From the IMG/VR virus record IMGVR_UViG_3300049215_000529, positions 124,001 to 188,000 of that record: a stretch of 64,000 nucleotides of DNA. One strand, given 5' to 3'. This document shows, one piece after another, positions 7,816 through 59,663 of this stretch; position 1 is the stretch's first letter, and the number at the start of each line of letters is the position of its first letter. The position numbers and the translations under genes are program-made. The notes below the pieces were generated by a model. That model was not told where the DNA came from. It did no database searches and saw only the letters and a list, made by a program, of their open reading frames with translations.

Positions 7816-7857
7816 TATATCTCCAATACCTATATATCTAAAGAGGAATAGGTATTT

Positions 7858-9000
7858 TCATTCATCTACTGACTTATTGATCCTATTAAGAACCTGCTCC
7901 CATTCTGGGTGCTCATCAAGATTGAACTTGACCAAGCGATCGATTTGAATTTGGCTTCTAACAGCCACCAATACGTTTTCATACGAAGCCTTTTGCAAGA
8001 AACGACCTACGTGTCTAACTGCTGGCGGCGGCTCGTTCTCGTTGGCACCATCTAGGTGAGTTGCCAAACGGGCGCAAGTAATCATACAAGCAACTAATTG
8101 CTTGCCTGGTTCCATCACATTGTACTTGGATGAAACATCCTTGCCATGATAAATGGCTTCGATCATAGGAAGAAGTTCTTGGTAGTATTCATAGTAGTTA
8201 GAGTACTTGAGACCAGCATCTTTACCAACGCAACCACAAACCTTCTTGTTCAACATGGTGGTGGTCCAACCAAGCTTCTCACCAGCATACAAAAGCTGGG
8301 AAGCTCTCTGCCAACCACGAGGAGAAGGATCGGCATAACGATCTTCTGGATCTACTGCACCGAACAAATCCTTAGGATGGTCGTTGATGTAAGCAGTAAC
8401 AGATGGGTGAATATGATTTGACTTACCAGCCCAATCCAACCAAGAGGTTGCATCGGCTTCAACCAAATATTTTTCTGCTCTATCTAATAGGGGTAAGCTG
8501 GGACGAGAGCCACCTTCAGAGATCAAGTTACCAGTCAAGATACTTGCTCTCAGCTTAGGAAGCTTACGACCGTTGATGGACTTGAATTGAGTGAACTCTA
8601 GCAAAGGTGCCCATAGGCTTGGGTCAGCCTTGTCCACTTCGTCTAACAGAGCAACTACATCTACATCACCATCGAACATTGGCTTGTAGAAATGAGGGAG
8701 CAAGAAATCGACGAATCTTTTGCGATTATCTTCTTCAGAAATAACCTTGCCCATGATATCTGGATAACCACCTAAGTCTACTCTTTCCAAAACGGACAAG
8801 TTAATATAGACTTCGTGCAGTCCTGCTTTCTTAATCTCTTGTTTAGAGATTTCAGTTTTACCAGTTCCTCTTCGACCGAAGATTGCGATGTTACTACCTA
8901 CATCAATGGCAGCTTTAATATGAGATGCCAAGTCTTTAGTATTTAATTTTTCCAGATTAAAATCTGAAGTAGTCATTTGTTGCGGGGCTGGTGTCGGCAT
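7858..9000 (-). CDS. MoxR-type AAA+ ATPase
   Basis: Walker A GRRGTGKT, Walker B LLDEVD, LLDR, SPRGW. Confidence 0.85.
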   Translation of the reverse strand: MPTPAPQQMTTSDFNLEKLNTKDLASHIKAAIDVGSNIAIFGRRGTGKTEISKQEIKKAGLHEVYINLSVLERVDLGGYPDIMGKVISEEDNRKRFVDFLLPHFYKPMFDGDVDVVALLDEVDKADPSLWAPLLEFTQFKSINGRKLPKLRASILTGNLISEGGSRPSLPLLDRAEKYLVEADATSWLDWAGKSNHIHPSVTAYINDHPKDLFGAVDPEDRYADPSPRGWQRASQLLYAGEKLGWTTTMLNKKVCGCVGKDAGLKYSNYYEYYQELLPMIEAIYHGKDVSSKYNVMEPGKQLVACMITCARLATHLDGANENEPPPAVRHVGRFLQKASYENVLVAVRSQIQIDRLVKFNLDEHPEWEQVLNRINKSVDE

Positions 9001-9111: not shown

Positions 9112-9432
9112 TTAATTCAGCTTCTCATCCTCATCAGACTCAAAGCTCAACTCACCTTTTCTATAACCATCCAAAAGTGTTTGCGCCGCTTTCCATGGAT
9201 CGCGCCCGAAAGAAAGTCGCCCATGAGTAAACTGAATTCTTACAATTATGTCTTCGGGACAATTTGAATTTTCTAGCTCTTCCGCTAGCCATAGCCCAGC
9301 AAAACAAACTTCTTTTATAATGGCTGAGGCAAGTAATGGCTTGGGCAAGCGATCATCGTTATCTAAAACATCTTGCCAACGAGCAATGTCTTCTTCTGTA
9401 ACAAATTCTGGTCTTGACATATTATTCCTCAA
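9112..9432 (-). CDS. Hypothetical protein
   Basis: ORF overlapping the tyrS stop. Confidence 0.6.
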   Translation of the reverse strand: MRNNMSRPEFVTEEDIARWQDVLDNDDRLPKPLLASAIIKEVCFAGLWLAEELENSNCPEDIIVRIQFTHGRLSFGRDPWKAAQTLLDGYRKGELSFESDEDEKLN

Positions 9433-10624
9433 TCATAAATCTCTTAAAACTCTTTTTACCCTTTTTCACTATAATCTCTTTGCCAAATTGTGATTTAGAA
9501 ATAATAAGTGTTGGATTATCTAAAACTTGAGTATTAATAGTAATACCTTTATTGTTAATTAGATTTCTTGCATCAGTACGAGACTTAGCAAATTCACATT
9601 TAACAATCAAGTCTAAAACATTAGTATTGTCATCGATAGGCGCGGCTTCCATGATAGACGGATCTTTCTTTTCAAAGAGAGACTCTACCACCTCAAGCGT
9701 GATATCGGTTGCATCTTTACCATGTACGATGGTAGTTAATTCGCAAGCCAATCTTTTCTTTGCCGCATTGATTTCCTCTACAGTAGTAAAGGGTATCGTA
9801 GCAATTTCCTGCAGCGACAAGAAGGTCAGCTGCTTAAAGCACTTCATAACCTCTGCGTCTGGAATGTTACGCCAGAACTGAAAAAAGTCGAAGATGCTCG
9901 TCTGCCCTTCTTCCGATAGCCACACTGCTCCCTTTTCGGTTTTCCCCATCTTGGTTCCATCCGAAGTAGTTAGCAAGGGGATTGTCAGTCCGAAAGATTC
10001 CTTGCCTTCTTTTTTATGAATCAAGTCAATACCAGCCAAAATGTTGGACCACTGATCATCGCCACCGATTTGAAGGATACAATCTCTCCAAACGAATAGA
10101 CGGAAGAAGTCAACCGCCTGCATGAGCATGTAATTGAATTCTAAAAATGAAAGTCCAGTCTCCAATCTGCTTTTGAAGCAATCGGCTCGCAGCATGTTGT
10201 TTACTGAGAATAACGGACCAAACTCTCGAATGAAGCTCAGGAAAGTAAAGTGCTGGAAGAATCTTTTGTTGTTGATGATCTGCCAGTCATCTACGCCCAC
10301 AATCTTTTTAATCTGCGGAGTAATGCTTTTGATGTTCGCTTCTACCACATGTTCTTCTAACATGGGGCGCATGCTACTCTTTCCACTCGGATCACCAATC
10401 TGTGCGGTAGCCCCACCAATTAACATGATTGGTATGTGACCAGCATTCGCCAAGCGTTTAGCAGTAATCATCTGTAATAAGTGCCCTACATGCAAACTGT
10501 TTGCAGTGGGATCAAATCCAATGTAAAAAGTAACTTTCTTTTCATTGAGAAGTTCACGGATCTTTTCCGTGTTGGTTGCCTGTTTCACCAGCCCACGCGC
10601 CTCTAAATCTTCAAATAGTTTCAT
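9422..10624 (-). CDS. tyrS: Tyrosyl-tRNA synthetase (bacterial type)
   Basis: YIGFDPT, HVGH, GDPSG, QIGGDDQW, KMGKT, C-terminal S4-like domain. Confidence 0.97.
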   Translation of the reverse strand: MKLFEDLEARGLVKQATNTEKIRELLNEKKVTFYIGFDPTANSLHVGHLLQMITAKRLANAGHIPIMLIGGATAQIGDPSGKSSMRPMLEEHVVEANIKSITPQIKKIVGVDDWQIINNKRFFQHFTFLSFIREFGPLFSVNNMLRADCFKSRLETGLSFLEFNYMLMQAVDFFRLFVWRDCILQIGGDDQWSNILAGIDLIHKKEGKESFGLTIPLLTTSDGTKMGKTEKGAVWLSEEGQTSIFDFFQFWRNIPDAEVMKCFKQLTFLSLQEIATIPFTTVEEINAAKKRLACELTTIVHGKDATDITLEVVESLFEKKDPSIMEAAPIDDNTNVLDLIVKCEFAKSRTDARNLINNKGITINTQVLDNPTLIISKSQFGKEIIVKKGKKSFKRFMIEE

Positions 10625-11116: not shown

Positions 11117-11191
11117 TGGTATCCCCAACAGGAATCGAACCTGTACTGATCGTTTCGAAGACGATCGTGATATCCTTTTCACTATAGGGAC
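11117..11191 (-). tRNA. tRNA-Arg(TCG)
   Basis: ATCGT-CT TCG AA-ACGAT arm, GTTCGA T loop, encoded CCA. Confidence 0.85.
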
Positions 11192-11228
11192 ATACATCTC
11201 TTATGTCAAGGGATCAATCTCAAAATAA

Positions 11229-11307
11229 GAGCGGTCTTTGACTCGAACGTTTCTCGATGATGAAATTCCGAATATCTGGTTCCTGCATGTAAATGCTTCA
11301 TTCGCTC
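11229..11307 (-). ncRNA. Candidate structured RNA motif, copy A
   Basis: GAGCG/CGCTC closing stem; CGAATG, TTACATG, TCATCA blocks shared with 61624..61743. Confidence 0.4.
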
Positions 11308-11373
11308 ATCTTGCGAATGGGATCCATGCCCCGTCTTTCCTTAAAAGAAACGGCATGACAGCGACGACTGCCC

Positions 11374-11452
<79 letters not shown>

Positions 11453-11456
11453 ATAA

Positions 11457-11894
11457 TTACAAACGTATGCCTTTATAGTAGTTGAATTGCTTTGCTGTTT
11501 TCTTTTTGTGACAGTTGGCACACCTTACGTCACATTTTTGAATTTCTTGTTTTATTGTCTCCAAGCTGAGCGTTCGCATCTCGCTCACATTATAAGTCTT
11601 GTCGCTACGATGGTCAAATTCTAAAACTATCGGATCTGTTTCTCCACAATCAATACATGGATTTTCTTTCAAGTAATCAATCATGAACTGCAAATTACTT
11701 ACTCTAATTTTATAATTGCGTTTCTTTGCTTTCGCAAGGTAATAATCTGTACGTAACTCGTAATGTTCTTTGTGAAGAACAGCTATACATTTCTTGCAAC
11801 GATGCTGAAGTCCGTCTTTCGAGCCAGCTCTTTTATTGAAATGATCTTCTAATGGGGTAGGATAATCTGTTTTACACTTCGTACAAATCTTCAT
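11457..11894 (-). CDS. HNH homing endonuclease
   Basis: CIDCG...LEFDH...CANCH. Confidence 0.8.
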   Translation of the reverse strand: MKICTKCKTDYPTPLEDHFNKRAGSKDGLQHRCKKCIAVLHKEHYELRTDYYLAKAKKRNYKIRVSNLQFMIDYLKENPCIDCGETDPIVLEFDHRSDKTYNVSEMRTLSLETIKQEIQKCDVRCANCHKKKTAKQFNYYKGIRL

Positions 11895-11935
11895 ACAAAG
11901 GATACGAAACTATTGATACATTTCGTATCAAATTC

Positions 11936-12021
11936 TGGCACGCCCGCTCGGAGTTGAACCGAGATAAAGAGTTTCGTAGACTCTTACGTAGACTCTTACG
12001 TAGATCCGCTACGACGGGCGT
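11936..12021 (-). pseudogene. Pseudo-tRNA-Arg(ACG) with a 12-bp tandem duplication in the D/anticodon region
   Basis: Intact acceptor stem, T arm, CCA and AAGAGT-CT ACG AA-ACTCTT arm; CGTAGACTCTTA x2 plus a partial third copy. Confidence 0.7.
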
Positions 12022-12024
12022 ATT

Positions 12025-12099
12025 TGGTATCTCTGATTGGACTCGAACCAACATAAAACTGCTTAGAAGGCAGCTGCCTTTCCATTAGACTACAGAGAC
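12025..12099 (-). tRNA. tRNA-Arg(TCT)
   Basis: GCTGC-CT TCT AA-GCAGT arm, CCA. Confidence 0.88.
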
Positions 12100-12116
12100 A
12101 TAAAACAAAACTTACT

Positions 12117-12193
12117 TGGCATGCCCAGAAGGATTTGAACCCTCAACCTATCGGGTAGAAGCCGATCGCTCTGTCCAGTTGAGCTATGAGCAC
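12117..12193 (-). tRNA. tRNA-Arg(TCT), second copy
   Basis: ATCGG-CT TCT AC-CCGAT arm, CCA. Confidence 0.9.
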
Positions 12194-12213
12194 ATAAAGA
12201 AACCAAAGTTTCT

Positions 12214-12288
12214 TGGTGATCCCTACGGGAATCGAACCCGTGTTAACAGATTGAGAATCTGCCGTCCTAGCCGCTAGACGAAGGGACC
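12214..12288 (-). tRNA. tRNA-Glu(CTC)
   Basis: GCAGA-TT CTC AA-TCTGT arm, CCA. Confidence 0.9.
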
Positions 12289-12319
12289 ATCGTATCTATT
12301 ATATCAGCTTATTAGCCGA

Positions 12320-12517
12320 TTAATGCCATCTAATTTCTTGTGGCTTTGGTTTGCAAACCGCAGGAGAATCAACTCCGTAAAATCCACAATACTCACCACG
12401 AGAACACTCACCATCATTTCCACAGAATTTTGCACCCTTAGGAACCGAACTCATGTCTACTTTATAAGCACATCCGATAACAAAAGCAACTGCTAACAAA
12501 ATTAATACTTTTTTCAT
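12320..12517 (-). CDS. Small Cys-rich predicted lipoprotein
   Basis: Signal peptide with VIGC lipobox; CxxDxECxxGxxC. Confidence 0.6.
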   Translation of the reverse strand: MKKVLILLAVAFVIGCAYKVDMSSVPKGAKFCGNDGECSRGEYCGFYGVDSPAVCKPKPQEIRWH

Positions 12518-12592
12518 TGGTGATCTGTACGAGAATCGAACTCGTGTGACAGCCTTGAAAGGGCTGGGTCCTAACCGCTAGACGAACAGACC
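12518..12592 (-). tRNA. tRNA-Glu(TTC)
   Basis: CAGCC-CT TTC AA-GGCTG arm, CCA. Confidence 0.92.
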
Positions 12593-12594
12593 GT

Positions 12595-12669
12595 TGGTAC
12601 TCCGTAGGGGTATCGATCCCCTTTTTCCTGGGTGAAAACCAAGTATCCTAGCCACTAGATGAACGGAGC
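12595..12669 (-). tRNA. tRNA-Glu(TTC), second copy, ATCGA T loop
   Basis: CTTGG-TT TTC AC-CCAGG arm, CCA. Confidence 0.85.
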
Positions 12670-12678
12670 ATAACTTAC

Positions 12679-12755
12679 TGGGGTGAGCGACGGGATTCGA
12701 ACCCGCTTATCGAGTGGTCACAACACCCGACCATTACCAAATGGAAACGCACACC
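12679..12755 (-). tRNA. tRNA-His(GTG)
   Basis: GGGTG-TT GTG AC-CACTC arm, encoded G-1 and C73, CCA. Confidence 0.85.
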
Positions 12756-12766
12756 ATAAACTTACT

Positions 12767-12843
12767 TGGGGTGTCGTACGGGTTTCGATCCCGTCGAAGA
12801 TTGGTTCACAGCCAACCGGGGTCACCAGCTCCCTCACGACACC
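12767..12843 (-). tRNA. tRNA-His(GTG), second copy, ATCGA T loop
   Basis: GTTGG-CT GTG AA-CCAAT arm, encoded G-1 and C73, CCA. Confidence 0.85.
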
Positions 12844-12910
12844 ATAATCTGGTAATATTCTTGCTTAATTATTAGTATATTTCTATATATCCTAGTTCAA
12901 GGGGTTTTTA

Positions 12911-13318
12911 ATGTCCTACACAATCGAGCAATTATTAACTTTAGCCACTCAATTTGATGAGCTATCTTCGGAGTCTTTGCAGAAAACTGCTGCAAAGAAA
13001 GAGAAAAAGAAGCTAGATCCTAAGGCTGAAGTTCGTAATAGAGGCAACGTTTGTGTTCCAGCTGAACAAGCCAAGGACAAGAAAGACCATTTCCCAATTA
13101 ATAATGCCGATCAAGCACGTAATGCTTTGTCTCGTGTTCATCAATACAGCTCTGTTCCAGAGTGGTACAAAGGTTCTTTGAAGGGTCTTCAAGCTTTAGT
13201 AGCAAGAAAAGTAAAAGCTAAGTATCCAAAGATTGATGTCGGCGGTAAAGATAAGAAATCCAAGAAAGCTGCTTTGGATGAAATCAATTCACTTCTTTCC
13301 AAGTACGCTGCTGAGTAA
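12911..13318 (+). CDS. Basic hypothetical protein with HFPI...ARNAL motif (DUF6582-like)
   Basis: KKDHFPINNADQARNALSR; lone plus-strand gene. Confidence 0.6.
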   Translation: MSYTIEQLLTLATQFDELSSESLQKTAAKKEKKKLDPKAEVRNRGNVCVPAEQAKDKKDHFPINNADQARNALSRVHQYSSVPEWYKGSLKGLQALVARKVKAKYPKIDVGGKDKKSKKAALDEINSLLSKYAAE

Positions 13319-13477
13319 TTCTTTATATTCTTCACCACATCTCTTCTCGTGAGTTTCATAATTCACGACATCAATATTTGTGTGACAAGTAGGGCACTCA
13401 TAGCAGCAAGGCATGATGTGAGCAACATCAAAGTCGCCGTCATGACAATGACAATCACATTCTTCACCGAATAACAT
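13289..13477 (-). CDS. Small Cys/His-rich hypothetical protein
   Basis: CDCHCH and CCYECPTCH; abuts the upstream HNH stop. Confidence 0.5.
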   Translation of the reverse strand: MLFGEECDCHCHDGDFDVAHIMPCCYECPTCHTNIDVVNYETHEKRCGEEYKELLSSVLGKK

Positions 13478-13967
13478 TTATTTAGCCTTCATATTTTTAG
13501 AACAAAAATTATCTGTTTGTGAATGACAGTTAGGGCAAAGGAATCTAAGATTTTCTCTGCGATTATCAAGCCCATTACCATTTTTATGATCAACTTGAAG
13601 AACTAATTTCTTACCGTTCCATTCTGATTTCAAACCACATTCACACTGTTCTGGAACGCCAGACTCTACTAGTGCTCGTTTTATTTTCCAACCATGATCT
13701 CTGCGACCGCCCAGTCTATCAAAAACAAGAATAGTTTCAGCCGATAATTTTGGAAATCCACCTTTATGAGGTTTGCCTTGGTTAGTAGCTAAACCTGTAA
13801 AATGTGAGGTATCTATGTTATAAAGTTTAAATCTGGATTTCAAATGAGAACTGCTGCCACCACTTATCTTTAAACCAAGCTCTCTCATTACCTGCTAGTA
13901 AGAGAAACACTTTTTTAACAATTGGCTCTAATAGTTCTTTGGAATATTTTTGATTGTTCTTACTCAT
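13478..13967 (-). pseudogene. HNH endonuclease with a frameshifted 5' end (intact ORF 13478..13888)
   Basis: LQVDHKNG...NLRFLCPNCHSQT; upstream ATG at 13967 (MSKNNQKYSKELLEPIVKK) is 1 nt out of frame across an A6 run. Confidence 0.65.
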
Positions 13968-13975
13968 TTAGAATC

Positions 13976-14061
13976 TGGTACTACTGGAGGGACTTGAACC
14001 CCCATGCCCTTACGAGCGCAACGTTCTTAGCGTTGTGTGTCTGCCGTTCCACCACAGTAGC
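13976..14061 (-). tRNA. tRNA-Leu(AAG)
   Basis: CAACG-CT AAG AA-CGTTG arm, long variable arm, CCA. Confidence 0.88.
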
Positions 14062-14066
14062 ATAAG

Positions 14067-14152
14067 TGGTGCTATCAGAGGGACTTGAACCCCCACGGGA
14101 TTACTCCCAACAGGTTCTAAGCCTGCCGCGTCTGCCGTTCCGCCATGATAGC
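14067..14152 (-). tRNA. tRNA-Leu(TAG)
   Basis: GCAGG-CT TAG AA-CCTGT arm, long variable arm, CCA. Confidence 0.92.
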
Positions 14153-14156
14153 ATTT

Positions 14157-14233
14157 TGGTGCTCAAGATGGGAGTCGAACCCATAAAACCTACTTTCTGA
14201 GAGTAGTACGTATGCCAATTCCGTCACCTGAGC
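14157..14233 (-). tRNA. tRNA-Leu(CAG) with short variable loop
   Basis: CTACT-CT CAG AA-AGTAG arm, 5-nt variable region, CCA. Confidence 0.82.
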
Positions 14234-14288
14234 GTGATGCCTTTATATATCGTCTTATTCCCAGATTTCTCGGAGAATGTCACCCACT

Positions 14289-14317
14289 AAGATAAGTCGG
14301 CAGCACATGATTGTCAA
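14289..14317 (-). promoter_or_regulatory. sigma70-like promoter TTGACA-N17-TATCTT before tRNA-Leu genes
   Basis: Motif in intergenic DNA. Confidence 0.5.
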
Positions 14318-14338
14318 GACTGACAATTTTAAAATTAA

Positions 14339-14425
14339 TGGTGGTCATGGTGGGAATCGAACCCACACGGGATTGCTCCCAACAGTTTTTGAGACTGCCG
14401 CGTCTGCCTATTCCGCCACACGACC
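14339..14425 (-). tRNA. tRNA-Leu(CAA)
   Basis: GCAGT-CT CAA AA-ACTGT arm, long variable arm, CCA. Confidence 0.92.
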
Positions 14426-14447: not shown

Positions 14448-14475
14448 AATATAACCACTATAGTTAGAGTGTCAA
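14448..14475 (-). promoter_or_regulatory. sigma70-like promoter TTGACA-N16-TATATT
   Basis: Motif directly upstream of tRNA-Leu(CAA). Confidence 0.6.
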
Positions 14476-14481: not shown

Positions 14482-16053
14482 TTATTTTAAGAAATGGTAA
14501 GCTGCCGTTGTTAAAAATTCTTCGAATCGTTCAGCTGTAGATAATGAAACAAACAGATCACGCGCTTTATATCCATTATCAAAATCCTTAGTTTCTTTTT
14601 GAAGAGTTATCATTTCCTCATCAACCATTTCTAGAAACCAATCTTTAGTTAGTGTTTGTTTATCTTCATCGGCAGTTACTATTGCCACCTTATGTCGCAA
14701 CCACTGCCAAACCTGGGAGCGGGATATTTCTGCCGTTGCAGCGTCCTCCATTAAGTTATAAATTGGGACACAGCCTTGTCCGGACAACCATGCTGCCAAA
14801 TAACGGATGCCGACGCGAATGTTATAACGTAAACCAGCTTCAGTACAAGTCCCTTCTGGTACAGCCAGTAAATCTTGTTCAGTCACTGTTGAATAGTGAA
14901 TGTTGCCAATTTGATTAGAGTGAGGCATGTATTCGTCAAAAATTTGACGAGCTACTGGAACCAATCCAGGATGGGCTACCCACGTTCCATCATGACCAGC
15001 TTTGACCTCGCGTAGCTTGTCAGCCTTTACTTTAGCCATAGCAGCTTCATTGGCTTTTGGATCGTCCTTAATTGGAATCTGTGCAGCCATACCGCCCATA
15101 GCATGGACATTTCTCTTATGGCAAGTCTGAATTAGGAGCTGGACATACGCATTAAGAAATCCTTTGTCCATTGTCAATTGAGCGCGATCGGGTAGAATAA
15201 ATTCCGGTTTATTCGCAAACTTTTTAATAAAGCTGAAAAGATAATCCCAACGCCCGCAATTCAAGCCAGCTGAATGATCTTTTAATTCCCATAGAAATTC
15301 ATTCATTTCAAATGCGGCATAGATGTTTTCAATTAAACAAGTTGCTTTAATTGTGCCTTTTGGAATTTTGAATTTCTTTTGAGAATAAACAAAAATATCA
15401 TTCCATAGACGAGCTTCCAAATAACTTTCCATTTTAGGAAGGTAAAAATAAGGAGCAGTTCCTCTTTCCATCAATTCTTTAACATTGTGGAAAAAGTATA
15501 AACCAAAATCCAATAGAGCTGCTGGAATGGGCATATTGTCTAACATAAAGTTCTTTTCGACTAAATGCCAACCACGCGGTCTGACCATCAAGACAGCAGT
15601 TTTTTCATTGAGTTTGTAGTCTTTACCTGCGTCTGATGTGAAGGTTATGGTGCGACGGACGGCATCCATCAAGTTAACCTGACCTTGCATCATGTTTTCC
15701 CATGTAGGAGAGTTAGAGTCTTCTAGGTCAGCCATGAACACATTAGCGCCCGAATTAAGGGCATTGATGATCATTTTGCGTTCGGTTGGTCCCGTAATCT
15801 CTACTCGCCTATCTAATAAGTCAGCAGGCAATGAAGCTACAGTCCAATCCGAACCACGGATGTGTGCGGTATTTGGTAAGAAGTATGGGAGCAAATCATG
15901 TCTATCCAACAGGGCTTGTCTTGCCTGGCGAGAAAATAATATCTCATTGACTCTTGGCGCAAACCTATTTACCAAATCAACCACAAAAAAGATTGCTTCA
16001 TCTGTTAATATGGTGTCTTTATATTTATCTAAATTAACTATCTCTATTCTCAT
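14482..16053 (-). CDS. aceB: Malate synthase A
   Basis: DRRVEITGP, MADLEDS, VRPRGWH, GLNCGRWDY, GCVPIYNLMEDAATAEISR. Confidence 0.97.
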   Translation of the reverse strand: MRIEIVNLDKYKDTILTDEAIFFVVDLVNRFAPRVNEILFSRQARQALLDRHDLLPYFLPNTAHIRGSDWTVASLPADLLDRRVEITGPTERKMIINALNSGANVFMADLEDSNSPTWENMMQGQVNLMDAVRRTITFTSDAGKDYKLNEKTAVLMVRPRGWHLVEKNFMLDNMPIPAALLDFGLYFFHNVKELMERGTAPYFYLPKMESYLEARLWNDIFVYSQKKFKIPKGTIKATCLIENIYAAFEMNEFLWELKDHSAGLNCGRWDYLFSFIKKFANKPEFILPDRAQLTMDKGFLNAYVQLLIQTCHKRNVHAMGGMAAQIPIKDDPKANEAAMAKVKADKLREVKAGHDGTWVAHPGLVPVARQIFDEYMPHSNQIGNIHYSTVTEQDLLAVPEGTCTEAGLRYNIRVGIRYLAAWLSGQGCVPIYNLMEDAATAEISRSQVWQWLRHKVAIVTADEDKQTLTKDWFLEMVDEEMITLQKETKDFDNGYKARDLFVSLSTAERFEEFLTTAAYHFLK

Positions 16054-16508
16054 TTTAGAACTGCTTTAGAAAATTTTTGATTCCATTCATCAATGGAACA
16101 GCCTTCAATTCGAAGCTCTGCTTCATACCAATTTTGGTCTTTCGCAGTCTTCTTCATATGACAACTGGCACACCTTATTACGCACTTTTCAATTTCTTTT
16201 TTAAGTAGTAGAAGAGAATGTCCACCATTCGCCAAAATTCCTACATTCATAAACTTAATATCACTCACGTGATCGAATTGTAGACAAATTGGATTACTTT
16301 CACCGCAGTCTACACACGGATGAGATTTTTTATATTCCCATAAAAACTGTCTCTTCCTGCGACGAGACTTTTCTTTTTGCTTCAATCCATTTTTCTTGTC
16401 GCATTTTTTACAAAGATATTTAGTATAAATACCTTTACCGCCCTTATTTCTATTATCCTTAAAACAATAAAAAATCAGAAACAGATTTTTCCTCTTTGCA
16501 GACGCCAC
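16050..16508 (-). CDS. HNH homing endonuclease between aceA and aceB
   Basis: CVDCG...LQFDH...CASCH; ATGA overlap with aceB. Confidence 0.8.
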   Translation of the reverse strand: MASAKRKNLFLIFYCFKDNRNKGGKGIYTKYLCKKCDKKNGLKQKEKSRRRKRQFLWEYKKSHPCVDCGESNPICLQFDHVSDIKFMNVGILANGGHSLLLLKKEIEKCVIRCASCHMKKTAKDQNWYEAELRIEGCSIDEWNQKFSKAVLK

Positions 16509-16565
16509 ATATTTTTGTATTTTTCATGCCATCATACAGAAGTATTGATAGGCACGTTGATGATA

Positions 16566-17798
16566 TTAAAACTGATCTTTTTCAGTACTGTCAGGAAGTG
16601 CTAAAGTAGAAGAGCTGCCTGAAGAAATTACAGTGGAAATTTGGTCAAAATAATTTGCACCAACCTCGCGTTGGTGTTTTACTGCTGTATATCCCGCTGC
16701 GACATTTTCGAATTCAGCTTCTTGCAAAGATGAGTAGGCACTCATGCCACTTGTCTTATATGCCTGCGCTAAAGTAAACATTGAATGATTTAGAGCATGA
16801 AATCCTGCCAAAGTGACGAATTGGAATTTATATCCTAATGCTCCTAGTTCATCTTGGAAAGAAGCAATTTGAGATTCTGATAAATTCTTTTTCCAATTGA
16901 AAGAAGGAGAGCAATTATAAGCCAAGGGCATGTTTGGGAAATTTTTATGAATTTCATCTGCAAACTCTTTAGCTTGACCAATATCGGGCGTAGAAGTTTC
17001 CATCCACAACATATCCGCATAAGGCGCATAAGCCAAGCCTCGGGCAATACAATACTCTACACCATTCTTAATTTTGAAAAAACCTTCGTCGGTACGCTCA
17101 GAAGATACAATGAAGGGACGATCTCTTTCGTCAGCATCTGTAGTAATTAATTTGGCTGAATCGGCATCTGTACGGGCAATGATAATAGTTCTGGTACCGC
17201 AGATATCGGCAGCTAGGCGAGCAGCGACTAATGATTTTATAAATTGATTCATGGGGACTAATACCTTGCCGCCCATATGACCGCACTTCTTTTCAGAAGA
17301 TAATTGATCCTCGAAATGTACGCCAGCAGCTCCCGCCTCAATCATACCCTTCATTAATTCAAAAGAATTAAGAGGTCCACCAAAGCCTGCCTCGGCATCA
17401 GCTACGATAGGAGCAAGCCAATATCTTTGAGGACATCCCTCCGCGCTCTCTATCTGATCAGCCCTAAGAAGTGCTGAGTTAATCTTTTTGACAACACTTG
17501 GAACGCTATTAGCAGGATACAAAGATTGGTCAGGATACATTTGACCAGCTAGATTAGCATCTGCCGCTACTTGCCAGCCCGAAAGATAAATCGCATGGAG
17601 CCCAGCTTTTACTTGTTGAACTGCCTGGTTACCAGTTAAAGCTCCCAAAGCTTTTACATATGGATCTACATTAAACAGAGTCCACAATCTTTCACAACCT
17701 AATTTTGCTATTGTATACTCGATTTGAAAGGAACCCCTTAATTTATCCACATCTTGCTTAGAGTAAACACGGAATTCATTAGGCTTATAGACACTCAT
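16566..17798 (-). CDS. aceA: Isocitrate lyase
   Basis: [15 protein letters not shown], catalytic [27 protein letters not shown]. Confidence 0.97.
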
Positions 17799-18269
17799 TT
17801 ATTCTCCATTAGGGTCGATAAAGATGATTTGCTTACCAATAGATTTCGCATAATTGATACAATTAGCAGTACCACCTGCTGTTCCGTCCCAAATTGCGAT
17901 TAAGATATCGCAATGGTCCACCATCCATTGATTGCGAATCTGCATTTTTGCCGCAGAATATCCGCCAGGAGAAACAACAACTTTTTCAATTGCGAATCTC
18001 AATAACATTCTGTAAATGTATTGTGAATGAAATGGCCAAGCATTATCTTGGTTTTCAAAAGGCACGGCTGCGGTAAAGGGAATATTTAATTTAATAGCAA
18101 TGAAAGCTGCCCATTGATCTATACCTAAAGCCATTCCAGAGATGACTCTATCAGGTTTTAGTTCACGGAGCTTGGCATCAATTTTCTTACAAACACGAAT
18201 ATAAGTTGGATTGGGAATCTTATATCCGCCGAGTTTGTCAGGTCGATGTCCAGTAAATGCTATTATCAT
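17799..18269 (-). CDS. SLOG-superfamily protein (YspA/DUF1273-like)
   Basis: FTGHRP, SGMALGIDQ, RNQWMVD, GGTANC. Confidence 0.8.
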   Translation of the reverse strand: MIIAFTGHRPDKLGGYKIPNPTYIRVCKKIDAKLRELKPDRVISGMALGIDQWAAFIAIKLNIPFTAAVPFENQDNAWPFHSQYIYRMLLRFAIEKVVVSPGGYSAAKMQIRNQWMVDHCDILIAIWDGTAGGTANCINYAKSIGKQIIFIDPNGE

Positions 18270-18643
18270 TTAGGAGTTCGTTTTCTTGGTGAATAATCTT
18301 TGTATATGTATCGTTTGCAGTAAGACTTATATGATTGGTATGTGCCACCAATTGCCACAACAACTTCTCTCCATTTTTTACCATGATATGGAATATTATT
18401 AGAAGTACAGCTAATAATATGTGCAACCTCATGTAGCAGTGTAAATTTTTCTCTTAATTGCGTTTTACGGCGCAAACATATCCAACCAGGATAATCATTA
18501 TGATTGCAATGTGCATGTGCCGCATGATGCTTATTAATTTCACATTTTTCTACACATTCACCAATACAAATTCCCCTAACTTCTTTGAAGTGTCGAATAC
18601 ATTTAGGAAATTGTGAGCGTCTTCTAATTTTCACTCCAATCAT
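18266..18643 (-). CDS. SprT-like metalloprotease-domain protein
   Basis: HEVAH and HGKKW. Confidence 0.55.
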   Translation of the reverse strand: MIGVKIRRRSQFPKCIRHFKEVRGICIGECVEKCEINKHHAAHAHCNHNDYPGWICLRRKTQLREKFTLLHEVAHIISCTSNNIPYHGKKWREVVVAIGGTYQSYKSYCKRYIYKDYSPRKRTPK

Positions 18644-18996
18644 TTTTTCGCTCTAAATCCTGGACATTCATCTACGCCACAGTATTTGCAGCCCACTGGA
18701 GCCATTTCATCATAACTATCAAAGTGGCGATAATATGGATGATCGCATTCACATGGAAGCTCATCACCATAGAAGGGATCATATTTGGAAGATAACTCTT
18801 CATCTAGGTTATCTTCCTCATCGTCTGCACCTTCTTCAGGAGGAGGCATACCTAGTTGCTCTTGCTCAATCATTTGCATAAACTGCTCACTCAATTCTGT
18901 AAATTCGCCATTACGTTGTAGATAGAACATGCCGACAAATTGTCCGCCCAGCGTGCCCAATTCTTCTACTTTGACTCTTACTTTGCCATGAATCAA
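18640..18996 (-). CDS. Acidic hypothetical protein with C-terminal Cys/His cluster
   Basis: CECDH...H...CKYC...C. Confidence 0.55.
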   Translation of the reverse strand: MIHGKVRVKVEELGTLGGQFVGMFYLQRNGEFTELSEQFMQMIEQEQLGMPPPEEGADDEEDNLDEELSSKYDPFYGDELPCECDHPYYRHFDSYDEMAPVGCKYCGVDECPGFRAKK

Positions 18997-19004
18997 TGTA
19001 TTAA

Positions 19005-19062
19005 TGTATTAATGTTCGATGCAAATTCGGCAATTTTGGTACCGTCATCGAACATTAATACA
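19005..19062. repeat. Perfect 17-bp inverted repeat, 24-nt loop
   Basis: TGTATTAATGTTCGATG (19005-21) and CATCGAACATTAATACA (19046-62). Confidence 0.9.
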
Positions 19063-19099
19063 ATTGGAAGATTAAGTAAGACTTCTTTCGGCTTGACTT

Positions 19100-19228
19100 T
19101 CATTCTACATGCTCTCTAGTAGTCAATACTTCTTTGATATTTTTATAAGCTTCCTGCCACGAAGGGTGGGACTTAGTAATCAGCTTATTCTTATAAGCCA
19201 ACAATCTTGCAGTAGTAAGTCTTTCCAT
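19100..19228 (-). CDS. Small hypothetical protein (42 aa)
   Basis: MERLTTARLL...EHVE just downstream of the phosphoesterase. Confidence 0.4.
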   Translation of the reverse strand: MERLTTARLLAYKNKLITKSHPSWQEAYKNIKEVLTTREHVE

Positions 19229-19250
19229 TTGAAATTTTGTTAAAAACACA

Positions 19251-19895
19251 TTACACCTCAATTGTAATCGGAGGGTTAGTTGGAGCATATGCTTCGGTAC
19301 AGCATGATGCATTAACAAATTGCACATTAGCAAGTTGCATTTTGCCATATCCATAGTGAATATGTCCACAGATATGAGCCTTTAGATTAGGCAACTCTGT
19401 AATACGCTTTGCTAACTCTTCACAGCCCACGTGCTCTACGTCAGCAACACCACGTGGAGCTGCATCCAATACATTCATAACTGGACCATGTGTAATCAGG
19501 ACATTGGTATCCTCGGGAATCTTTGCCCAATGATGAGCAATATCCTTGCCCCTCATGGCATTGAAAGCCCAGTTATGAAACCAAGGCTGCCAAGGGCTTC
19601 CCCAAAAGTTAATGCCACCAATCTTGACACCACTGTCTTGAAGATAGGTGATTTCATTTTCTTCGCACAATCTGAGCGCAATATTTCGGCTATTGTTTTG
19701 GAAACACCAATCATGATTACCAGAGATGATAATCTTACTTTGGAAGTTTTGGGCACTCATCCAGCGCAAAAATTTGGATAGCTTGCCAATATCACCACGA
19801 TAGGTAATGTCACCAGCATGAACAAGCACATCGCCTGGCGGCAAAAGAATTTTCTCTTCTTGCTCATGTGTGTCGGAAATACATACTATTTTCAT
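19251..19895 (-). CDS. Calcineurin-like metallophosphoesterase
   Basis: SDTH, HAGD, GNHD, THG, GHIH. Confidence 0.9.
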   Translation of the reverse strand: MKIVCISDTHEQEEKILLPPGDVLVHAGDITYRGDIGKLSKFLRWMSAQNFQSKIIISGNHDWCFQNNSRNIALRLCEENEITYLQDSGVKIGGINFWGSPWQPWFHNWAFNAMRGKDIAHHWAKIPEDTNVLITHGPVMNVLDAAPRGVADVEHVGCEELAKRITELPNLKAHICGHIHYGYGKMQLANVQFVNASCCTEAYAPTNPPITIEV

Positions 19896-22327: not shown

Positions 22328-22504
22328 TCACAAGTGTTTATTTAGCCAATCAACTGAGAATCCGATTATGGCTATAACCGCAAATATTGGCCAAATTATG
22401 GCTGCCCAAAACATAAACCAAAAATCGTAATAGACACGCAAGAATTTTGTTAAAGCATGTCCCACAAATAATCCAATCAAAAGGTAAAGCAAGAAATAAA
22501 TCAT
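22328..22504 (-). CDS. Small membrane protein (58 aa, not in ORF track)
   Basis: Own translation MIYFLLYLLIGLFVGH...WAAIIWPIFAVIAIIG...; start overlaps NADAR stop. Confidence 0.55.
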   Translation of the reverse strand: MIYFLLYLLIGLFVGHALTKFLRVYYDFWFMFWAAIIWPIFAVIAIIGFSVDWLNKHL

Positions 22505-22947
22505 TACTCTCCCTGTAATTCTTTACGGACCCTCATCAAAGTCTTGCCAAGCATATTTTTGCCTGTACCATCTTTGCCACATCCCCAGTACCAGTCCACG
22601 GGCGAATCTTCAATAAGCTCTTCATTGCCAGTAGCCATTAGTTCGGCGCGCAAGTCTGCATGTTGTAGAAATTTAGCTAGAACACACTGATACATAACAT
22701 CATCTTTGACATGGTTCCAATCACCACGAAGTTTTATTTTCTGTCCAAGATCACGAGCTTCGCGAGGAGTCTTAGCTGCCCAAATCATTTCTTCGTCTTC
22801 TAGGATAACAGTTTTGGCAGCTTGATAAGCCGTTTCAACATTGTCACACCAGCGCCCGCCACCCGGACCAACTATAAACATTCTGGCTTTCTTGAAGTTA
22901 TTCAGAAATCCATATGGTTCATTGGTCTTATAAAATTTAATAGCCAT
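22504..22947 (-). CDS. NADAR-family hydrolase (YbiA-like)
   Basis: ETAYQAAK, KFLQH, LxEDSP.DxYWG, GKNMLGKTLMRVR. Confidence 0.92.
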   Translation of the reverse strand: MAIKFYKTNEPYGFLNNFKKARMFIVGPGGGRWCDNVETAYQAAKTVILEDEEMIWAAKTPREARDLGQKIKLRGDWNHVKDDVMYQCVLAKFLQHADLRAELMATGNEELIEDSPVDWYWGCGKDGTGKNMLGKTLMRVRKELQGE

Positions 22948-23296: not shown

Positions 23297-23787
23297 TCAT
23301 CACCTTCTCTGCGATAAATTACAACACGAACATTCTTATCTTCAAGATAATTTGCGAAGTTAGTTAGCGTGCCTAAATAGTGTTCCCAAATACCACCACC
23401 AAGATTGCATCCAATTTTCCATGGGAATGCGATGCTTTCCAAATCAGGAATCTCTGCAATTCGCAACAAACACCTATGGAAACATTTGTCTCGAACTAAT
23501 ATGCCATCCAAAGTCGATTTGGGATACTTGGGCTTGCCAGGATAGTATTGAGCAAACATGTTGATGACATATCGCTGCTCTTGACCATCACCCAATATTT
23601 TTATTGTTCCAAGAGCATCTGGTTCAGTCCTTGCGACATAAGTGTTAGCATGAGGAAACTTATCAAAAATAGCTTTGGCTGTTCCAGCAGAATTCTGTGT
23701 CAAACAATTGCATTGATGTGCAATATATTTTTCTTTAGAATTTAGCAAGTCACCTGTAACAATTTCAATCATGTGTCTATCTGTCAT
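23293..23787 (-). CDS. Macrodomain ADP-ribosyl hydrolase (TARG1/DarG-like)
   Basis: GDLL, IAHQCNC, GTAKAI, PWKIGCNLGGG. Confidence 0.88.
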   Translation of the reverse strand: MTDRHMIEIVTGDLLNSKEKYIAHQCNCLTQNSAGTAKAIFDKFPHANTYVARTEPDALGTIKILGDGQEQRYVINMFAQYYPGKPKYPKSTLDGILVRDKCFHRCLLRIAEIPDLESIAFPWKIGCNLGGGIWEHYLGTLTNFANYLEDKNVRVVIYRREGDE

Positions 23788-24722
23788 TTAGGAGTATGTA
23801 TAACTGGTAATCCTCGACCTATTGAGGGTCTTGCAAACTGAGGATTATCTCTCATCCAAGATTGAGTCATCCATAATTGTCCGCACCCACTCCCGACATC
23901 ATCTTGTCCAGCAGGATCAAACATGCGCGTAGAGAAACCACGTTCCAATAATAGACTCTGGAAATTAGCAGCTAATTCACGTTGACGTGCATTTGCAGCA
24001 GCAACCGTTTCCTCTCGTTCGCAGATAACTGAAATGGTAGCTTGCCAAATGCTTGGATCAAAAAGTTTCATGAGTCTATCAGCATCTTCAGCCGAAGAGT
24101 TTTTCTCATGAGCGCAGTAGTTGAAGAAGGGTTGGCGACCAACTTCCATTGCCCACAGAGTTCCTTGGCGAGCAATCTCTCCCAAAGTTAATTTCTTTTG
24201 GAACGGAATGAGTTGATTGCGAGCTTCATCCGTGCTTTCATGAACGGAAAACTGCAAACCAACCTTATCCACTTCCTTGGAAATGTCAATGACTGGTTGG
24301 TAATCGACACGCGGAGCTGAAGTTGAAATCAGCAGTGCGGCTTGTGGATACAATGAATGCAGCTTGCGAATTGCCGGATTCAGCTCCTTAAGATTGAGCA
24401 TGGGCTCGCCCATGCTCATGAACATGATTTGCATACGCTGGACCTTGGTAGGGTCAATGCCTTTATCGGCAAACAGGTGTTCCGTTTGCGAAACAATCTC
24501 ATCCGCTGTTAAAGAGCGGACGAAACTGTCACCAGCACCACAGAATCGGCATCCAATTGGACAACCGCTTTGAGTGGAACAGCAAACCACTGTTCTGGCT
24601 TCAAAAGTTGGATATTTGTAGAGGACAGATTCCGCCACAGCATTATCCTTTTCGAAGACATATTTGAAAACATTTTCATCTATGCTAGGAATACACCTGG
24701 TTTTATTCCATAATTGTTGCAT
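23784..24722 (-). CDS. Radical-SAM RNA methyltransferase, RlmN/Cfr-like
   Basis: CCSTQSGCPIGCRFC, MSMGEP, GSGCGQL. Confidence 0.8.
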   Translation of the reverse strand: MQQLWNKTRCIPSIDENVFKYVFEKDNAVAESVLYKYPTFEARTVVCCSTQSGCPIGCRFCGAGDSFVRSLTADEIVSQTEHLFADKGIDPTKVQRMQIMFMSMGEPMLNLKELNPAIRKLHSLYPQAALLISTSAPRVDYQPVIDISKEVDKVGLQFSVHESTDEARNQLIPFQKKLTLGEIARQGTLWAMEVGRQPFFNYCAHEKNSSAEDADRLMKLFDPSIWQATISVICEREETVAAANARQRELAANFQSLLLERGFSTRMFDPAGQDDVGSGCGQLWMTQSWMRDNPQFARPSIGRGLPVIHTPK

Positions 24723-58262: not shown

Positions 58263-58335
58263 GGTTCCGGGGTTGGGGATCGAACCCAAATCAGATCATT
58301 CGGAATAACCTATCCTGCCATTAGACGAACCCGGA
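58262..58335 (-). tRNA. tRNA with CCG (Arg) anticodon on a Gln-type body
   Basis: GGTTA-TT CCG AA-TGATC arm; U1:A72; D arm almost identical to neighbouring tRNA-Gln; CCA. Confidence 0.75.
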
Positions 58336-58409
58336 TGGCTGGGATACTAGGATTCGAACCTAGATAAAAGGATTCAGAGACCTTTGTCCTGCCGTTAGAC
58401 GATATCCCA
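58336..58409 (-). tRNA. tRNA-Gln(CTG)
   Basis: AAAGG T-CT CTG AA-T CCTTT arm, U1:A72, G73, CCA. Confidence 0.88.
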
Positions 58410-59648: not shown

Positions 59649-59663
59649 AGTATACCTTTATTG

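What the first reader, a model, noticed from the sequence alone, without database searches (positions are those of the whole stretch)
14482..17798. Complete glyoxylate shunt (aceA plus aceB) in a phage
Both genes are full length with catalytic motifs intact (ICL KKCGH; malate synthase A RPRGWH, CGRWD, MEDAATAE), co-oriented, separated only by an HNH gene and embedded among phage orphans and tRNAs. The shunt bypasses CO2-releasing TCA steps, allowing net carbon assimilation from acetyl-CoA. It could turn host lipid or acetate carbon into precursors during infection (inference). I do not know of a characterised phage with both enzymes.
Basis: partly seen in the sequence, partly recalled or inferred. 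Interest (0 to 1): 0.8.

Follow-up and report, generated by a model that had tools for sequence, protein, structure and literature searches.

The report
Huge-phage glyoxylate shunt gene pair

Summary
On the minus strand lie a 410-aa isocitrate lyase (16566-17798), a 152-aa HNH endonuclease (16050-16508) and a 523-aa malate synthase A (14482-16053). Both enzymes score above the NCBIfam equivalog cut-offs and keep every catalytic motif I checked.

The contig is viral. It is a 204-kb IMG/VR record, about 47% complete, with portal, large terminase, head protease and 32 tRNAs. Relatives are 427-478 kb.

The two genes match the phage's GC3 and codon usage and are under strong purifying selection. 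They belong to phage-only clades: ICL 100/100 and MS 100/100. In relatives ICL directly abuts MS, so the HNH is a clean 516-bp insertion.

The pair looks ancestral to this huge-phage clade. MS was later lost in at least three relatives, while ICL is always kept. The phage encodes no citrate synthase, aconitase, IDH, Acs or AceK, so it supplies only the two shunt-specific steps.

The novelty claim fails. aceA/aceB were reported in viromes (2013), in a complete 179-kb marine phage genome (2017) and in 22 huge phages (2025 preprint). In addition, 36 of the 80 best IMG/VR ICL loci carry an adjacent MS. I found no experimental characterisation.

Interest is low to moderate.

The parts
16566..17798 (-). 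aceA: isocitrate lyase, 410 aa. A GGAG Shine-Dalgarno lies 6 nt upstream of the ATG, and the start abuts the stop of the upstream YpsA/SLOG gene.
   Evidence: NF011645 709 bits and TIGR01346 555 bits. PDB 6lrp gives 622 bits over residues 10-410. The motifs SGWQ 73-76, DAEAGFGG 134-141, HFEDQ 161-165, KKCGH 170-174, ARTDA 208-212, NCSPSFNW 295-302 and TLAGFH 329-334 are present and invariant in alignment A1. The RBS is seen.
16509..16565 (-). 57-bp leader between the ICL stop and the HNH start. It is part of the 516-bp insertion that relatives lack.
   Evidence: Junction alignment A2; sequence.
16050..16508 (-). Free-standing HNH endonuclease, 152 aa, GTG start. It has a CxxC...DH...N...CxxCH layout, and its stop overlaps the aceB start (ATGA).
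   Evidence: phrog_2255 at 2.5e-22 and phrog_3106 at 1.3e-15. It is absent at the same junction in L014, L015 and L101. Paralogues lie at window 11469-11750 (46% aa identity) and 1673-2119. An HNH-less joint was seen in run X7.
14482..16053 (-). aceB: malate synthase A, 523 aa.
   Evidence: TIGR01344 768 bits over the full profile. PDB 3cux gives 662 bits and 3cuz (E. coli MS-A) 546 bits. The residues aligned to E. coli Arg166, Glu250, Asp278 and Asp447 are conserved: RPRGWH 158-163, LIEN 240-243, CGRWDY 266-271 and MEDAATAE 435-442.
17799..18269 (-). YpsA/SLOG-family gene. It is the conserved immediate upstream neighbour of aceA throughout this huge-phage clade and is probably in the same transcription unit.
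   Evidence: Pfam PF06908 at 4.4e-14. The same adjacency is seen in L014, L016, L018, L180 and L103.
18266..19895 (-). Conserved syntenic block upstream: a SprT-like ORF (18266-18643), a small conserved ORF (18640-18996) and a calcineurin-like phosphoesterase (19251-19895).
   Evidence: Pfam. The order metallophos, two small ORFs, YpsA, ICL recurs in relatives.

Best explanation
These are two functional auxiliary metabolic genes of an uncultured huge phage from a moss metagenome, with an estimated genome of about 430-480 kb.

Shown:
- aceA encodes a bona fide isocitrate lyase and aceB a bona fide malate synthase A.
- Both belong to lineages that have evolved inside phages for a long time.
- In the clade's ancestor they formed a tightly coupled aceA-aceB bicistron, with the ICL stop overlapping or abutting the MS start.
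- In this genome a free-standing HNH homing-type endonuclease has inserted exactly at that junction, without damaging either gene.
- The phage encodes only the two shunt-specific steps.

Inferred:
- During infection the phage enzymes draw on host citrate synthase and aconitase for isocitrate.
- They split isocitrate into succinate and glyoxylate, then condense glyoxylate with acetyl-CoA to give malate.
- This bypasses the two CO2-releasing TCA steps and any host control of the branch point (IclR/AceK-type regulation).
- C2 carbon from acetate, fatty acids or storage polymers is thereby kept as C4 precursors for aspartate, pyrimidines and gluconeogenesis while a very large genome is replicated in a carbon-poor habitat.
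- aceB is now probably translated by coupling to the HNH ORF instead of to aceA.
For: Enzyme identity:
- Both proteins score above the equivalog cut-offs over the full profile length.
- They are close to solved ICL and MS-A structures (ICL about 70% identical to PDB 6lrp by my count of the printed alignment, and 60% to enterobacterial ICL), and every catalytic and ligand motif is conserved.

Viral context:
- Portal, TerL and head protease are on the same contig.
- CheckV completeness is 47% of a 204-kb record.
- Relatives with the same synteny are 427-477 kb.
- An identical locus is present in a second IMG/VR record.

Not a recent capture or a chimera:
- GC3 is 0.31 for aceA and 0.35 for aceB, against a genome mean of 0.35.
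- RSCU correlation with the genome is 0.80 and 0.83, against a genome median of 0.79.

Selection:
- dN is 0.12-0.26 with dS saturated.

Phage-only clades:
- ICL, 10 rows, 100/100.
- MS, 14 rows, 100/100.
- The ICL and MS trees share the same deep split. Both sub-clades contain members with MS, so the pair is ancestral.

HNH insertion:
- The junction alignment shows a clean 516-bp insert.
- PHROG annotates the ORF as HNH.
- An HNH-less joint is seen in another metagenome.

Only the shunt-specific steps:
- No aconitase, citrate synthase, IDH, AMP-binding/Acs or AceK was found in this record or in four related records, one of them 97% complete.

Presence in an RNA library:
- An exact 241-nt contig covers 16553-16793 in a moss metatranscriptome.
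Against: - No enzyme assay, host or infection data exist, so the physiological role is inference.
- MS has been lost in at least three relatives (L016, L018, L103/G002), and most ICL-bearing phages lack MS (the preprint reports 98 ICL against 22 MS). The full two-step shunt is therefore not what selection consistently preserves.
- aceB has no recognisable Shine-Dalgarno sequence and now depends on the HNH ORF upstream, which could lower its expression.
- The RNA-library pieces are short. They come from one data set filed twice, and no silent control stretch was laid, so transcription is not demonstrated.
- The record is only about 47% complete, so the absence of other pathway genes from it is weak evidence.
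Confidence: 0.72

Rival explanations
1. ICL is the selected function and MS is only an accessory. On this view the phage mainly needs isocitrate cleavage. Possible reasons are to divert flux from IDH, to lower NADH/ROS, or to supply succinate or glyoxylate (for example towards glycine). ICL might also act as a methylisocitrate lyase, as some bacterial ICLs do. MS, where present, would merely remove toxic glyoxylate, or the host's own malate synthase would do that job.
For: ICL is retained in every relative examined, while MS is missing at the syntenic site in L016 and L018 (467- and 462-kb contigs) and from G002, G003 and G004 altogether. Of the 80 best IMG/VR ICL loci, 44 have no adjacent MS. 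The preprint counts 98 ICL against 22 MS. ICL also gives weaker matches to methylisocitrate-lyase models.
Against: Where MS is present it is under strong purifying selection and has been co-inherited with ICL since the clade's origin. Adjacency with translational coupling points to a two-step unit. The ICL score for the methylisocitrate-lyase models is far below their cut-offs (88 against 354 bits).
Confidence: 0.22
2. The genes are cellular. Either the contig is a bacterial fragment, a prophage flank or a mis-assembly that joins host DNA to phage DNA.
For: IMG/VR does contain proviruses and host flanks; G003 and G007 are classed as provirus. The GenBank 'phage' matches with both genes are misfiled Salmonella contigs or small unannotated records named as phages.
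Against: Phage-type genes flank the pair on both sides for tens of kilobases: tRNA arrays, HNH genes, TyrRS, PARP-like, LigA and a helicase, with portal and TerL on the same contig. Composition and codon usage match the phage at 40% GC, whereas the nearest named cellular loci fetched for comparison are mostly 60-75% GC, with a few low-GC exceptions. The same synteny recurs in independent assemblies from different samples. Both proteins form phage-only clades.
Confidence: 0.02
3. The genes are inactive relics or have been recruited for a non-catalytic role.
For: None directly. Phage ICLs are about 15 residues shorter at the N-terminus than bacterial ones: 409-411 aa against a median of 425.
Against: All catalytic and metal- or substrate-binding motifs are intact. 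dN is far below dS. There are no frameshifts or internal stops.
Confidence: 0.03

Closest known systems
aceBA operon of the complete environmental phage genome TARA_ERS478052_N000008 (Nishimura et al. 2017, PMC5332604)
   Same: An uncultured large phage (179 kb) encodes adjacent, co-oriented isocitrate lyase (411 aa) and malate synthase A (502 aa). The genes are interpreted as auxiliary metabolic genes for the glyoxylate shunt.
   Different: It is a marine T4-like lineage with the bacterial gene order aceB then aceA. IMG/VR contigs with that order fall in separate ICL and MS clades from the window, and three of five tested carry a T4-type portal. The window's clade has the order aceA then aceB, a roughly 430-480-kb genome and a moss habitat.
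Glyoxylate-cycle genes in the Huge Phage Genome Collection (bioRxiv 10.1101/2025.02.27.640493)
   Same: It reports 98 ICL and 22 MS genes in huge phages. [quoted passage not shown] MS-bearing phages come only from marine, soil and plant-related samples. The window (IMG/VR, moss, one intervening gene) fits this description and is probably among them.
   Different: The preprint gives counts only. It does not describe the HNH insertion, the phage-only clades, the ancestral pairing with later MS loss, or selection. I could not confirm that this contig is included, because the stored supplement is truncated.
Bacterial aceBAK glyoxylate-bypass operon (E. coli type)
   Same: The two enzymes are the same. 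The window's proteins are 60% (ICL) and 50-51% (MS-A) identical to the Salmonella and E. coli proteins, with conserved catalytic residues.
   Different: The gene order is reversed. There is no AceK kinase/phosphatase. An HNH gene sits between the two enzyme genes. The ICL N-terminus is shortened. The setting is a phage genome.
Free-standing homing endonucleases inserted between paired phage genes, for example T4 mobE between nrdA and nrdB (from my own knowledge, not tested here)
   Same: A small HNH-family ORF sits precisely in the junction between two functionally linked, co-transcribed genes. It shows presence/absence polymorphism among relatives, and several paralogues lie elsewhere in the genome.
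   Different: No sequence relationship to MobE was tested. Cleavage activity and the target site are unknown.
Phage C48C1 (Kyanoviridae, OQ984149.1)
   Same: It is the only genuine phage record in the GenBank/INPHARED collection with a full-length ICL homologue, 54.7% identical to the window's.
   Different: The gene is annotated as a hypothetical protein. The record has no malate synthase. It is a 156-kb T4-like cyanophage-family genome.

Membership tests
Isocitrate lyase (NCBIfam NF011645 / TIGR01346; Pfam PF00463) | Full-length match above the curated equivalog cut-off | tested here: met
   NF011645 gives 709 bits against a cut-off of 562, over profile positions 28-428 of 430. TIGR01346 gives 555 bits against 276.
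Isocitrate lyase (NCBIfam NF011645 / TIGR01346; Pfam PF00463) | Catalytic loop K-K-C-G-H plus Mg2+ and substrate-binding motifs ([33 protein letters not shown]) | tested here: met
   All are present, invariant across 14 phage and bacterial sequences and aligned to solved ICLs. The assignment of roles to these motifs comes from my knowledge of M. tuberculosis and E. coli ICL structures.
Isocitrate lyase (NCBIfam NF011645 / TIGR01346; Pfam PF00463) | Enzymatic cleavage of isocitrate to succinate and glyoxylate | not testable with these tools
   This needs a recombinant enzyme assay or complementation.
Malate synthase A (NCBIfam TIGR01344; Pfam PF20656, PF01274, PF20659) | Full-length match above the equivalog cut-off with the three-domain architecture, and not the G isoform | tested here: met
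   TIGR01344 gives 768 bits against a cut-off of 594.5, over profile positions 1-510 of 511. The MS-G models give only 34 and 20 bits, far below their cut-offs. MS_N, TIM-barrel and MS_C are all found.
Malate synthase A (NCBIfam TIGR01344; Pfam PF20656, PF01274, PF20659) | Catalytic Arg and Asp and the Mg2+ ligands (E. coli MS-A Arg166, Glu250, Asp278, Asp447) | tested here: met
   In the alignment to 3cuz the corresponding residues are conserved. They lie in RPRGWH, LIEN, CGRWDY and MEDAATAE. The residue numbering is from my memory of the E. coli MS-A structure paper and is consistent with the printed alignment at an offset of +1.
Phage auxiliary metabolic gene | Encoded inside a bona fide viral genome, with viral genes on both sides and hallmark genes on the same contig | tested here: met
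   Portal, TerL and head protease. Phage-type genes and tRNA arrays lie on both sides. CheckV and IMG/VR class the record as a virus.
Phage auxiliary metabolic gene | Composition and evolutionary history of a resident phage gene, not fresh host DNA | tested here: met
   GC3 and RSCU match the genome. Both proteins fall in phage-only clades with 100/100 support. Synteny is conserved across samples.
Phage auxiliary metabolic gene | Expressed during infection and altering host metabolism | tested here: inconclusive
   Exact 241-nt and 151-nt contigs are present in one moss metatranscriptome. DNA carry-over is not excluded, and no control stretch could be laid.
Complete bacterial aceBAK-type glyoxylate bypass | The branch-point regulator AceK, or other TCA steps, encoded alongside | tested here: not met
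   No AceK, IDH, aconitase, citrate synthase or Acs was found in G000-G004. G000 is only about 47% complete.
Free-standing HNH homing endonuclease | HNH nuclease domain | tested here: met
   phrog_2255 at 2.5e-22, phrog_3106 at 1.3e-15 and phrog_4234 at 6.5e-8. The CxxC...DH...N...CxxCH pattern is visible in the translation. Pfam HNH models give no match at 1e-3.
Free-standing HNH homing endonuclease | Presence/absence polymorphism at an otherwise conserved site | tested here: met
   It is absent in L014, L015, L101 and L180, where ICL abuts MS. A contig in run X7 joins 16067 to 16660 and so skips it.
Free-standing HNH homing endonuclease | Site-specific cleavage of the HNH-less allele, and homing | not testable with these tools
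   This needs an in vitro cleavage assay or co-infection assays.

The most novel reading that the evidence does not exclude
In this widespread clade of roughly 430-500-kb phages, the aceA-aceB cassette would be an old, phage-adapted module: an N-terminally shortened ICL, translational coupling, and a fixed position behind a YpsA/SLOG gene in a neighbourhood rich in NAD/ADP-ribose genes. Its selected core would be ICL alone. MS would be dispensable and repeatedly lost. The primary benefit would then be not carbon assimilation but control of the isocitrate branch point (redox or NAD(P)H balance, or succinate/glyoxylate supply) during takeover of the host.
Probability: 0.2. Interest if true: 0.5.

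Novelty: already known. Interest (0 to 1): 0.3.

Why it matters
A phage that brings both glyoxylate-shunt enzymes can override the host's decision at the isocitrate branch point. It can then keep C2-derived carbon for building a very large genome. That matters for carbon flow in peat and moss ecosystems, where acetate is a major intermediate.

The phenomenon has already been reported from viromes, from a complete marine phage genome and from a huge-phage catalogue, so this window adds an instance and not a concept. What this analysis adds is evolutionary detail:
- The pair is ancestral and under purifying selection in a huge-phage clade.
- aceB has been lost several times, while aceA is always kept.
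- In this genome the operon junction has been invaded by an HNH endonuclease.

The real open question is whether the phage enzymes are active and what they do to infected-cell metabolism. That question is untouched, and the two genes could be tested by simple complementation.

Tried and rejected
1. Donor of the genes. The nearest named cellular homologues by identity are Polyangiaceae, Labilithrix and Myxococcales MAG proteins: ICL 73-74%, MS 64-66%. FastTree placed the phage clades next to these or next to a Bacteriovoracaceae MAG. The careful mixture-model trees leave the backbone unresolved, at 40/78 and 71/75. I therefore name no donor or host.

2. Host inference from LigA. The best 120 hits are all relatives from the same phage group or unnamed, at 73% identity or more, on contigs up to 506 kb. 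No named cellular protein appears among them.

3. Target-site duplication flanking the HNH insert. By eye, the ICL 3' end and the HNH 3' end share a CAGTTYTAA-like string. The repeat finder does not recover it, and it reports several equally good chance repeats in the same 640 bp. This idea is not supported.

4. Promoter and terminator scans around the locus. Counts equal the shuffled expectation, and no operon boundaries could be assigned. The only notable sites lie downstream of aceB, in front of tRNA genes.

5. A general YpsA/SLOG-ICL association. The adjacency holds only inside this clade, including L103, and not in the other viral ICL clades.

6. Checking whether this contig is listed in the preprint's supplementary table 10. 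The stored file is truncated and gives no match.

7. GenBank phage matches with both genes. These turned out to be Salmonella WGS contigs or small unannotated records (1.5-4.5 kb) named as phages, not phage genomes.

8. Mobility of the HNH from run X7. A 152-nt piece inside the HNH is 100% identical, while the aceA/aceB pieces in that run are about 93% identical. A near-identical strain may co-occur in the sample, so this is only suggestive.
Full report
**1. Observation**

- malate synthase, 14482-16053 (523 aa)
- an HNH-like ORF, 16050-16508 (152 aa)
- isocitrate lyase, 16566-17798 (410 aa)

The malate synthase matches the NCBIfam equivalog TIGR01344 (malate synthase A) at 768 bits against a cut-off of 594.5, over the whole profile. 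The malate synthase G models score only 20-34 bits. The lyase matches NF011645 at 709 bits (cut-off 562) and TIGR01346 at 555 bits. Pfam sees the three malate-synthase domains and the ICL family.

Both proteins align end to end with solved structures: ICL with 6lrp at 622 bits, MS with 3cux at 662 bits and with E. coli MS-A 3cuz at 546 bits.

- ICL: [22 protein letters not shown] 170-174, [19 protein letters not shown]. All are invariant in a 14-sequence phage and bacterial alignment.
- MS: the residues aligned to E. coli Arg166, Glu250, Asp278 and Asp447.

The middle ORF has no Pfam match at 1e-3 but is an HNH endonuclease by PHROGs (phrog_2255, 2.5e-22).

**2. Is it a phage?**

Yes. The window is bases 124001-188000 of a 204,190-bp IMG/VR virus record that CheckV rates 47% complete. 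That implies a genome of about 430 kb.

- The same contig carries a portal protein, a large terminase subunit, a head-maturation protease domain and a DnaE-type polymerase.
- The window carries TyrRS, LigA, a helicase, a nucleotidyltransferase and several HNH genes.
- There are 19 tRNA genes in the window and 13 more elsewhere in the record.
- 225 of 262 ORFs are on one strand, and coding density is 92%.
- The source is a moss metagenome.
- An identical copy of the locus is present in a second IMG/VR record.
- The nearest GenBank phages are only 24-25% identical in TerL. LigA, however, has more than 120 relatives at 73% identity or more, on contigs up to 506 kb. This is therefore a large, uncultured huge-phage group.

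**3. Are the genes resident and functional?**

- Composition. aceA and aceB have the phage's composition. GC3 is 0.31 and 0.35 against a genome mean of 0.35 (sd 0.06). RSCU correlation with the rest of the genome is 0.80 and 0.83 against a median of 0.79. The nearest named cellular loci fetched for comparison are mostly 60-75% GC, with a few low-GC exceptions.
- Selection. Against orthologues in related phages, dN is 0.12-0.26 while dS is saturated. That indicates strong purifying selection.
- Expression signals. aceA has a GGAG Shine-Dalgarno 6 nt upstream of its ATG, which directly follows the stop of the upstream YpsA/SLOG gene.
- RNA library. A moss metatranscriptome, filed twice as X9 and X10, contains an exact 241-nt contig over 16553-16793 (the aceA 3' end plus 13 nt) and an exact 151-nt contig at 18769-18919. 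This shows presence in an RNA library. It does not prove transcription, because I could not lay a control stretch.

**4. Relatives and history**

The best ICL hits are 22 proteins of 409-411 aa at 77-85% identity, several on contigs of 427-477 kb. One further hit, P0005 (590 aa, 64% identity over 71% of the query), was left out of the trees. The best MS hits at 66-71% lie on the same contigs.

The neighbourhood is conserved: phosphoesterase, two small ORFs, YpsA/SLOG, ICL, then MS. In L014 (its ICL protein also occurs on contigs up to 477 kb), L015 (427 kb), L101 (252 kb) and L180, the ICL stop overlaps or abuts the MS start codon.

The junction alignment shows that the window differs by a clean 516-bp insertion. 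It consists of a 57-bp leader plus the HNH ORF, whose stop overlaps the MS ATG. A groundwater metagenome contains a contig that joins 16067 to 16660, which is an HNH-less allele. The genome holds HNH paralogues at 11469-11750 and 1673-2119.

In mixture-model ML trees:
- The window's ICL sits in a phage-only clade with 100/100 support.
- Its MS sits in a 14-row clade with 100/100 support, whose checked members are all phage contigs.
- Both trees show the same deep split into an L180-type and a window-type group, and both groups include MS-positive genomes.

The simplest reading is that the ICL-MS pair was present in the clade's ancestor. MS was later lost in L016 (467 kb), L018 (462 kb) and L103/G002. 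ICL is a single copy and present in all five records checked.

The backbone linking the phage clades to bacteria is unresolved. Myxococcota MAG proteins are the nearest by identity, but no donor or host can be named.

**5. What the phage does and does not encode**

Searches of this record and four related records, one of them 97% complete, found no aconitase, citrate synthase, isocitrate dehydrogenase, AMP-binding/acetyl-CoA synthetase or AceK.

The phage therefore supplies only the two shunt-specific reactions. It must rely on the host for isocitrate supply and for onward use of malate and succinate.

**6. Mechanism**

Shown:
- Two intact, conserved, phage-resident enzyme genes.
- An ancestral coupled bicistron.
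- An HNH insertion at the junction.

Inferred from the established biochemistry of the glyoxylate bypass:
- During infection ICL diverts isocitrate away from the two decarboxylations.
- MS condenses glyoxylate with acetyl-CoA.
- Together they convert two C2 units into C4 precursors for aspartate, pyrimidines and gluconeogenesis, free of host IclR/AceK-type control.

The repeated loss of MS and the excess of ICL-only phages support a rival emphasis. In that view ICL alone is the selected function, and MS is either a glyoxylate-removing accessory or is supplied by the host.

After the insertion, aceB has no visible Shine-Dalgarno sequence and is probably translated by coupling to the HNH ORF.

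**7. Comparison with what is known**

The pair is not new in phages.
- Hurwitz et al. 2013 listed aceAB among viral genes in Pacific viromes (PMC4053976).
- Nishimura et al. 2017 described an aceBA operon in a complete 179-kb environmental phage genome and discussed its role (PMC5332604).
- A 2025 preprint reports 98 ICL and 22 MS genes in huge phages. [quoted passage not shown] This moss-derived contig, with one intervening gene, fits that description.

My own survey of IMG/VR agrees.
- At least 205 contigs carry an ICL relative.
- Of the best 80, 36 carry an adjacent co-oriented MS-A, 32 of them in the bacterial order aceB then aceA.
- Three of five such contigs tested carry a T4-type portal.

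The pair therefore occurs in at least two unrelated phage lineages.

In GenBank phage records the only genuine phage with an ICL is Kyanoviridae Phage C48C1. There the gene is annotated as hypothetical and there is no MS. Literature searches found no biochemical or genetic characterisation of a phage ICL or MS.

**8. Verdict**

I rate it already known and of low to moderate interest.

Its remaining value is as a clean, testable example. It also adds evolutionary details: an ancestral pair, recurrent aceB loss and an HNH invasion of the operon junction.

Noticed in passing
L010:11329-11420 (record 199329-199420), outside the window; stop-codon counts are for the whole record: A 92-nt tRNA with anticodon CTA (an amber suppressor, which ARAGORN labels 'Pyl') lies next to a 92-nt tRNA-Ser. 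TAG ends only 7 of 261 predicted ORFs, against 162 TAA and 92 TGA. This could mean TAG avoidance or partial recoding, as described for other huge phages.
   Followed up: partly
window 11117-14425 and 58262-61899: There are two dense tRNA arrays, of 13 and 6 genes, all on the minus strand. They include duplicated isoacceptors (Arg-tct x2, Glu-ttc x2, His-gtg x2, four Leu, four Gly). HNH endonuclease ORFs are interspersed at 11469-11750 and 13478-13888. The 204-kb record holds 32 tRNAs in total.
   Followed up: partly
window 14448-14475 and 14289-14317, minus strand: The two best sigma-70-like promoter matches in the region are TTGACA-16-TATATT (11 of 12) and TTGACA-17-TATCTT (10 of 12). They sit just after the aceB stop and directly upstream of tRNA-Leu genes on the same strand. 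They may be host-type promoters that drive the tRNA array. The overall promoter count is not above the shuffled expectation.
   Followed up: no
window 17799-18269, 22504-22947, 23784-24722, 25719-27242; relatives L014, L015, L018: The neighbourhood has an NAD/ADP-ribose theme: YpsA/SLOG, NADAR, a radical-SAM protein and a WGR-PARP_reg-PARP protein of about 500 aa. Relatives add an ADP-ribosylglycohydrolase, a CTP_transf_like (NMNAT-type) gene, NUDIX and GNAT acetyltransferases. A link to aceA/aceB is not established.
   Followed up: partly
window about 24871-25752 (+ strand): A LAGLIDADG-type homing endonuclease ORF of 293 aa lies on the opposite strand and overlaps the end of the PARP-like gene region. 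Together with at least four HNH ORFs, this suggests the genome is heavily colonised by selfish nucleases.
   Followed up: no
window 9422-10624 and 6052-9000: A phage-encoded tyrosyl-tRNA synthetase (phrog_9270, 1e-125) is conserved in relatives a few kilobases from aceA. Next to it is a pair made of a DUF2201 (VWA/metallopeptidase-like) protein and an ATPase.
   Followed up: no
L118:4295-4912 and L119:4256-4909 (other IMG/VR phages with ICL only): In a second viral ICL clade, the gene immediately upstream of ICL has a weak match (4e-5, just above the Pfam cut-off) to the citrate lyase ligase C-terminal domain. This may hint at another citrate/isocitrate-related accessory gene. I did not pursue it.
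   Followed up: no
ICL proteins P0001-P0023 compared with P0024-P0120: All ICLs of the huge-phage clade are 409-411 aa, against a median of 425 aa for the next 96 (mostly bacterial) hits. The difference is a shorter N-terminus: the match to NF011645 starts at profile position 28. Any functional meaning is unknown.
   Followed up: partly
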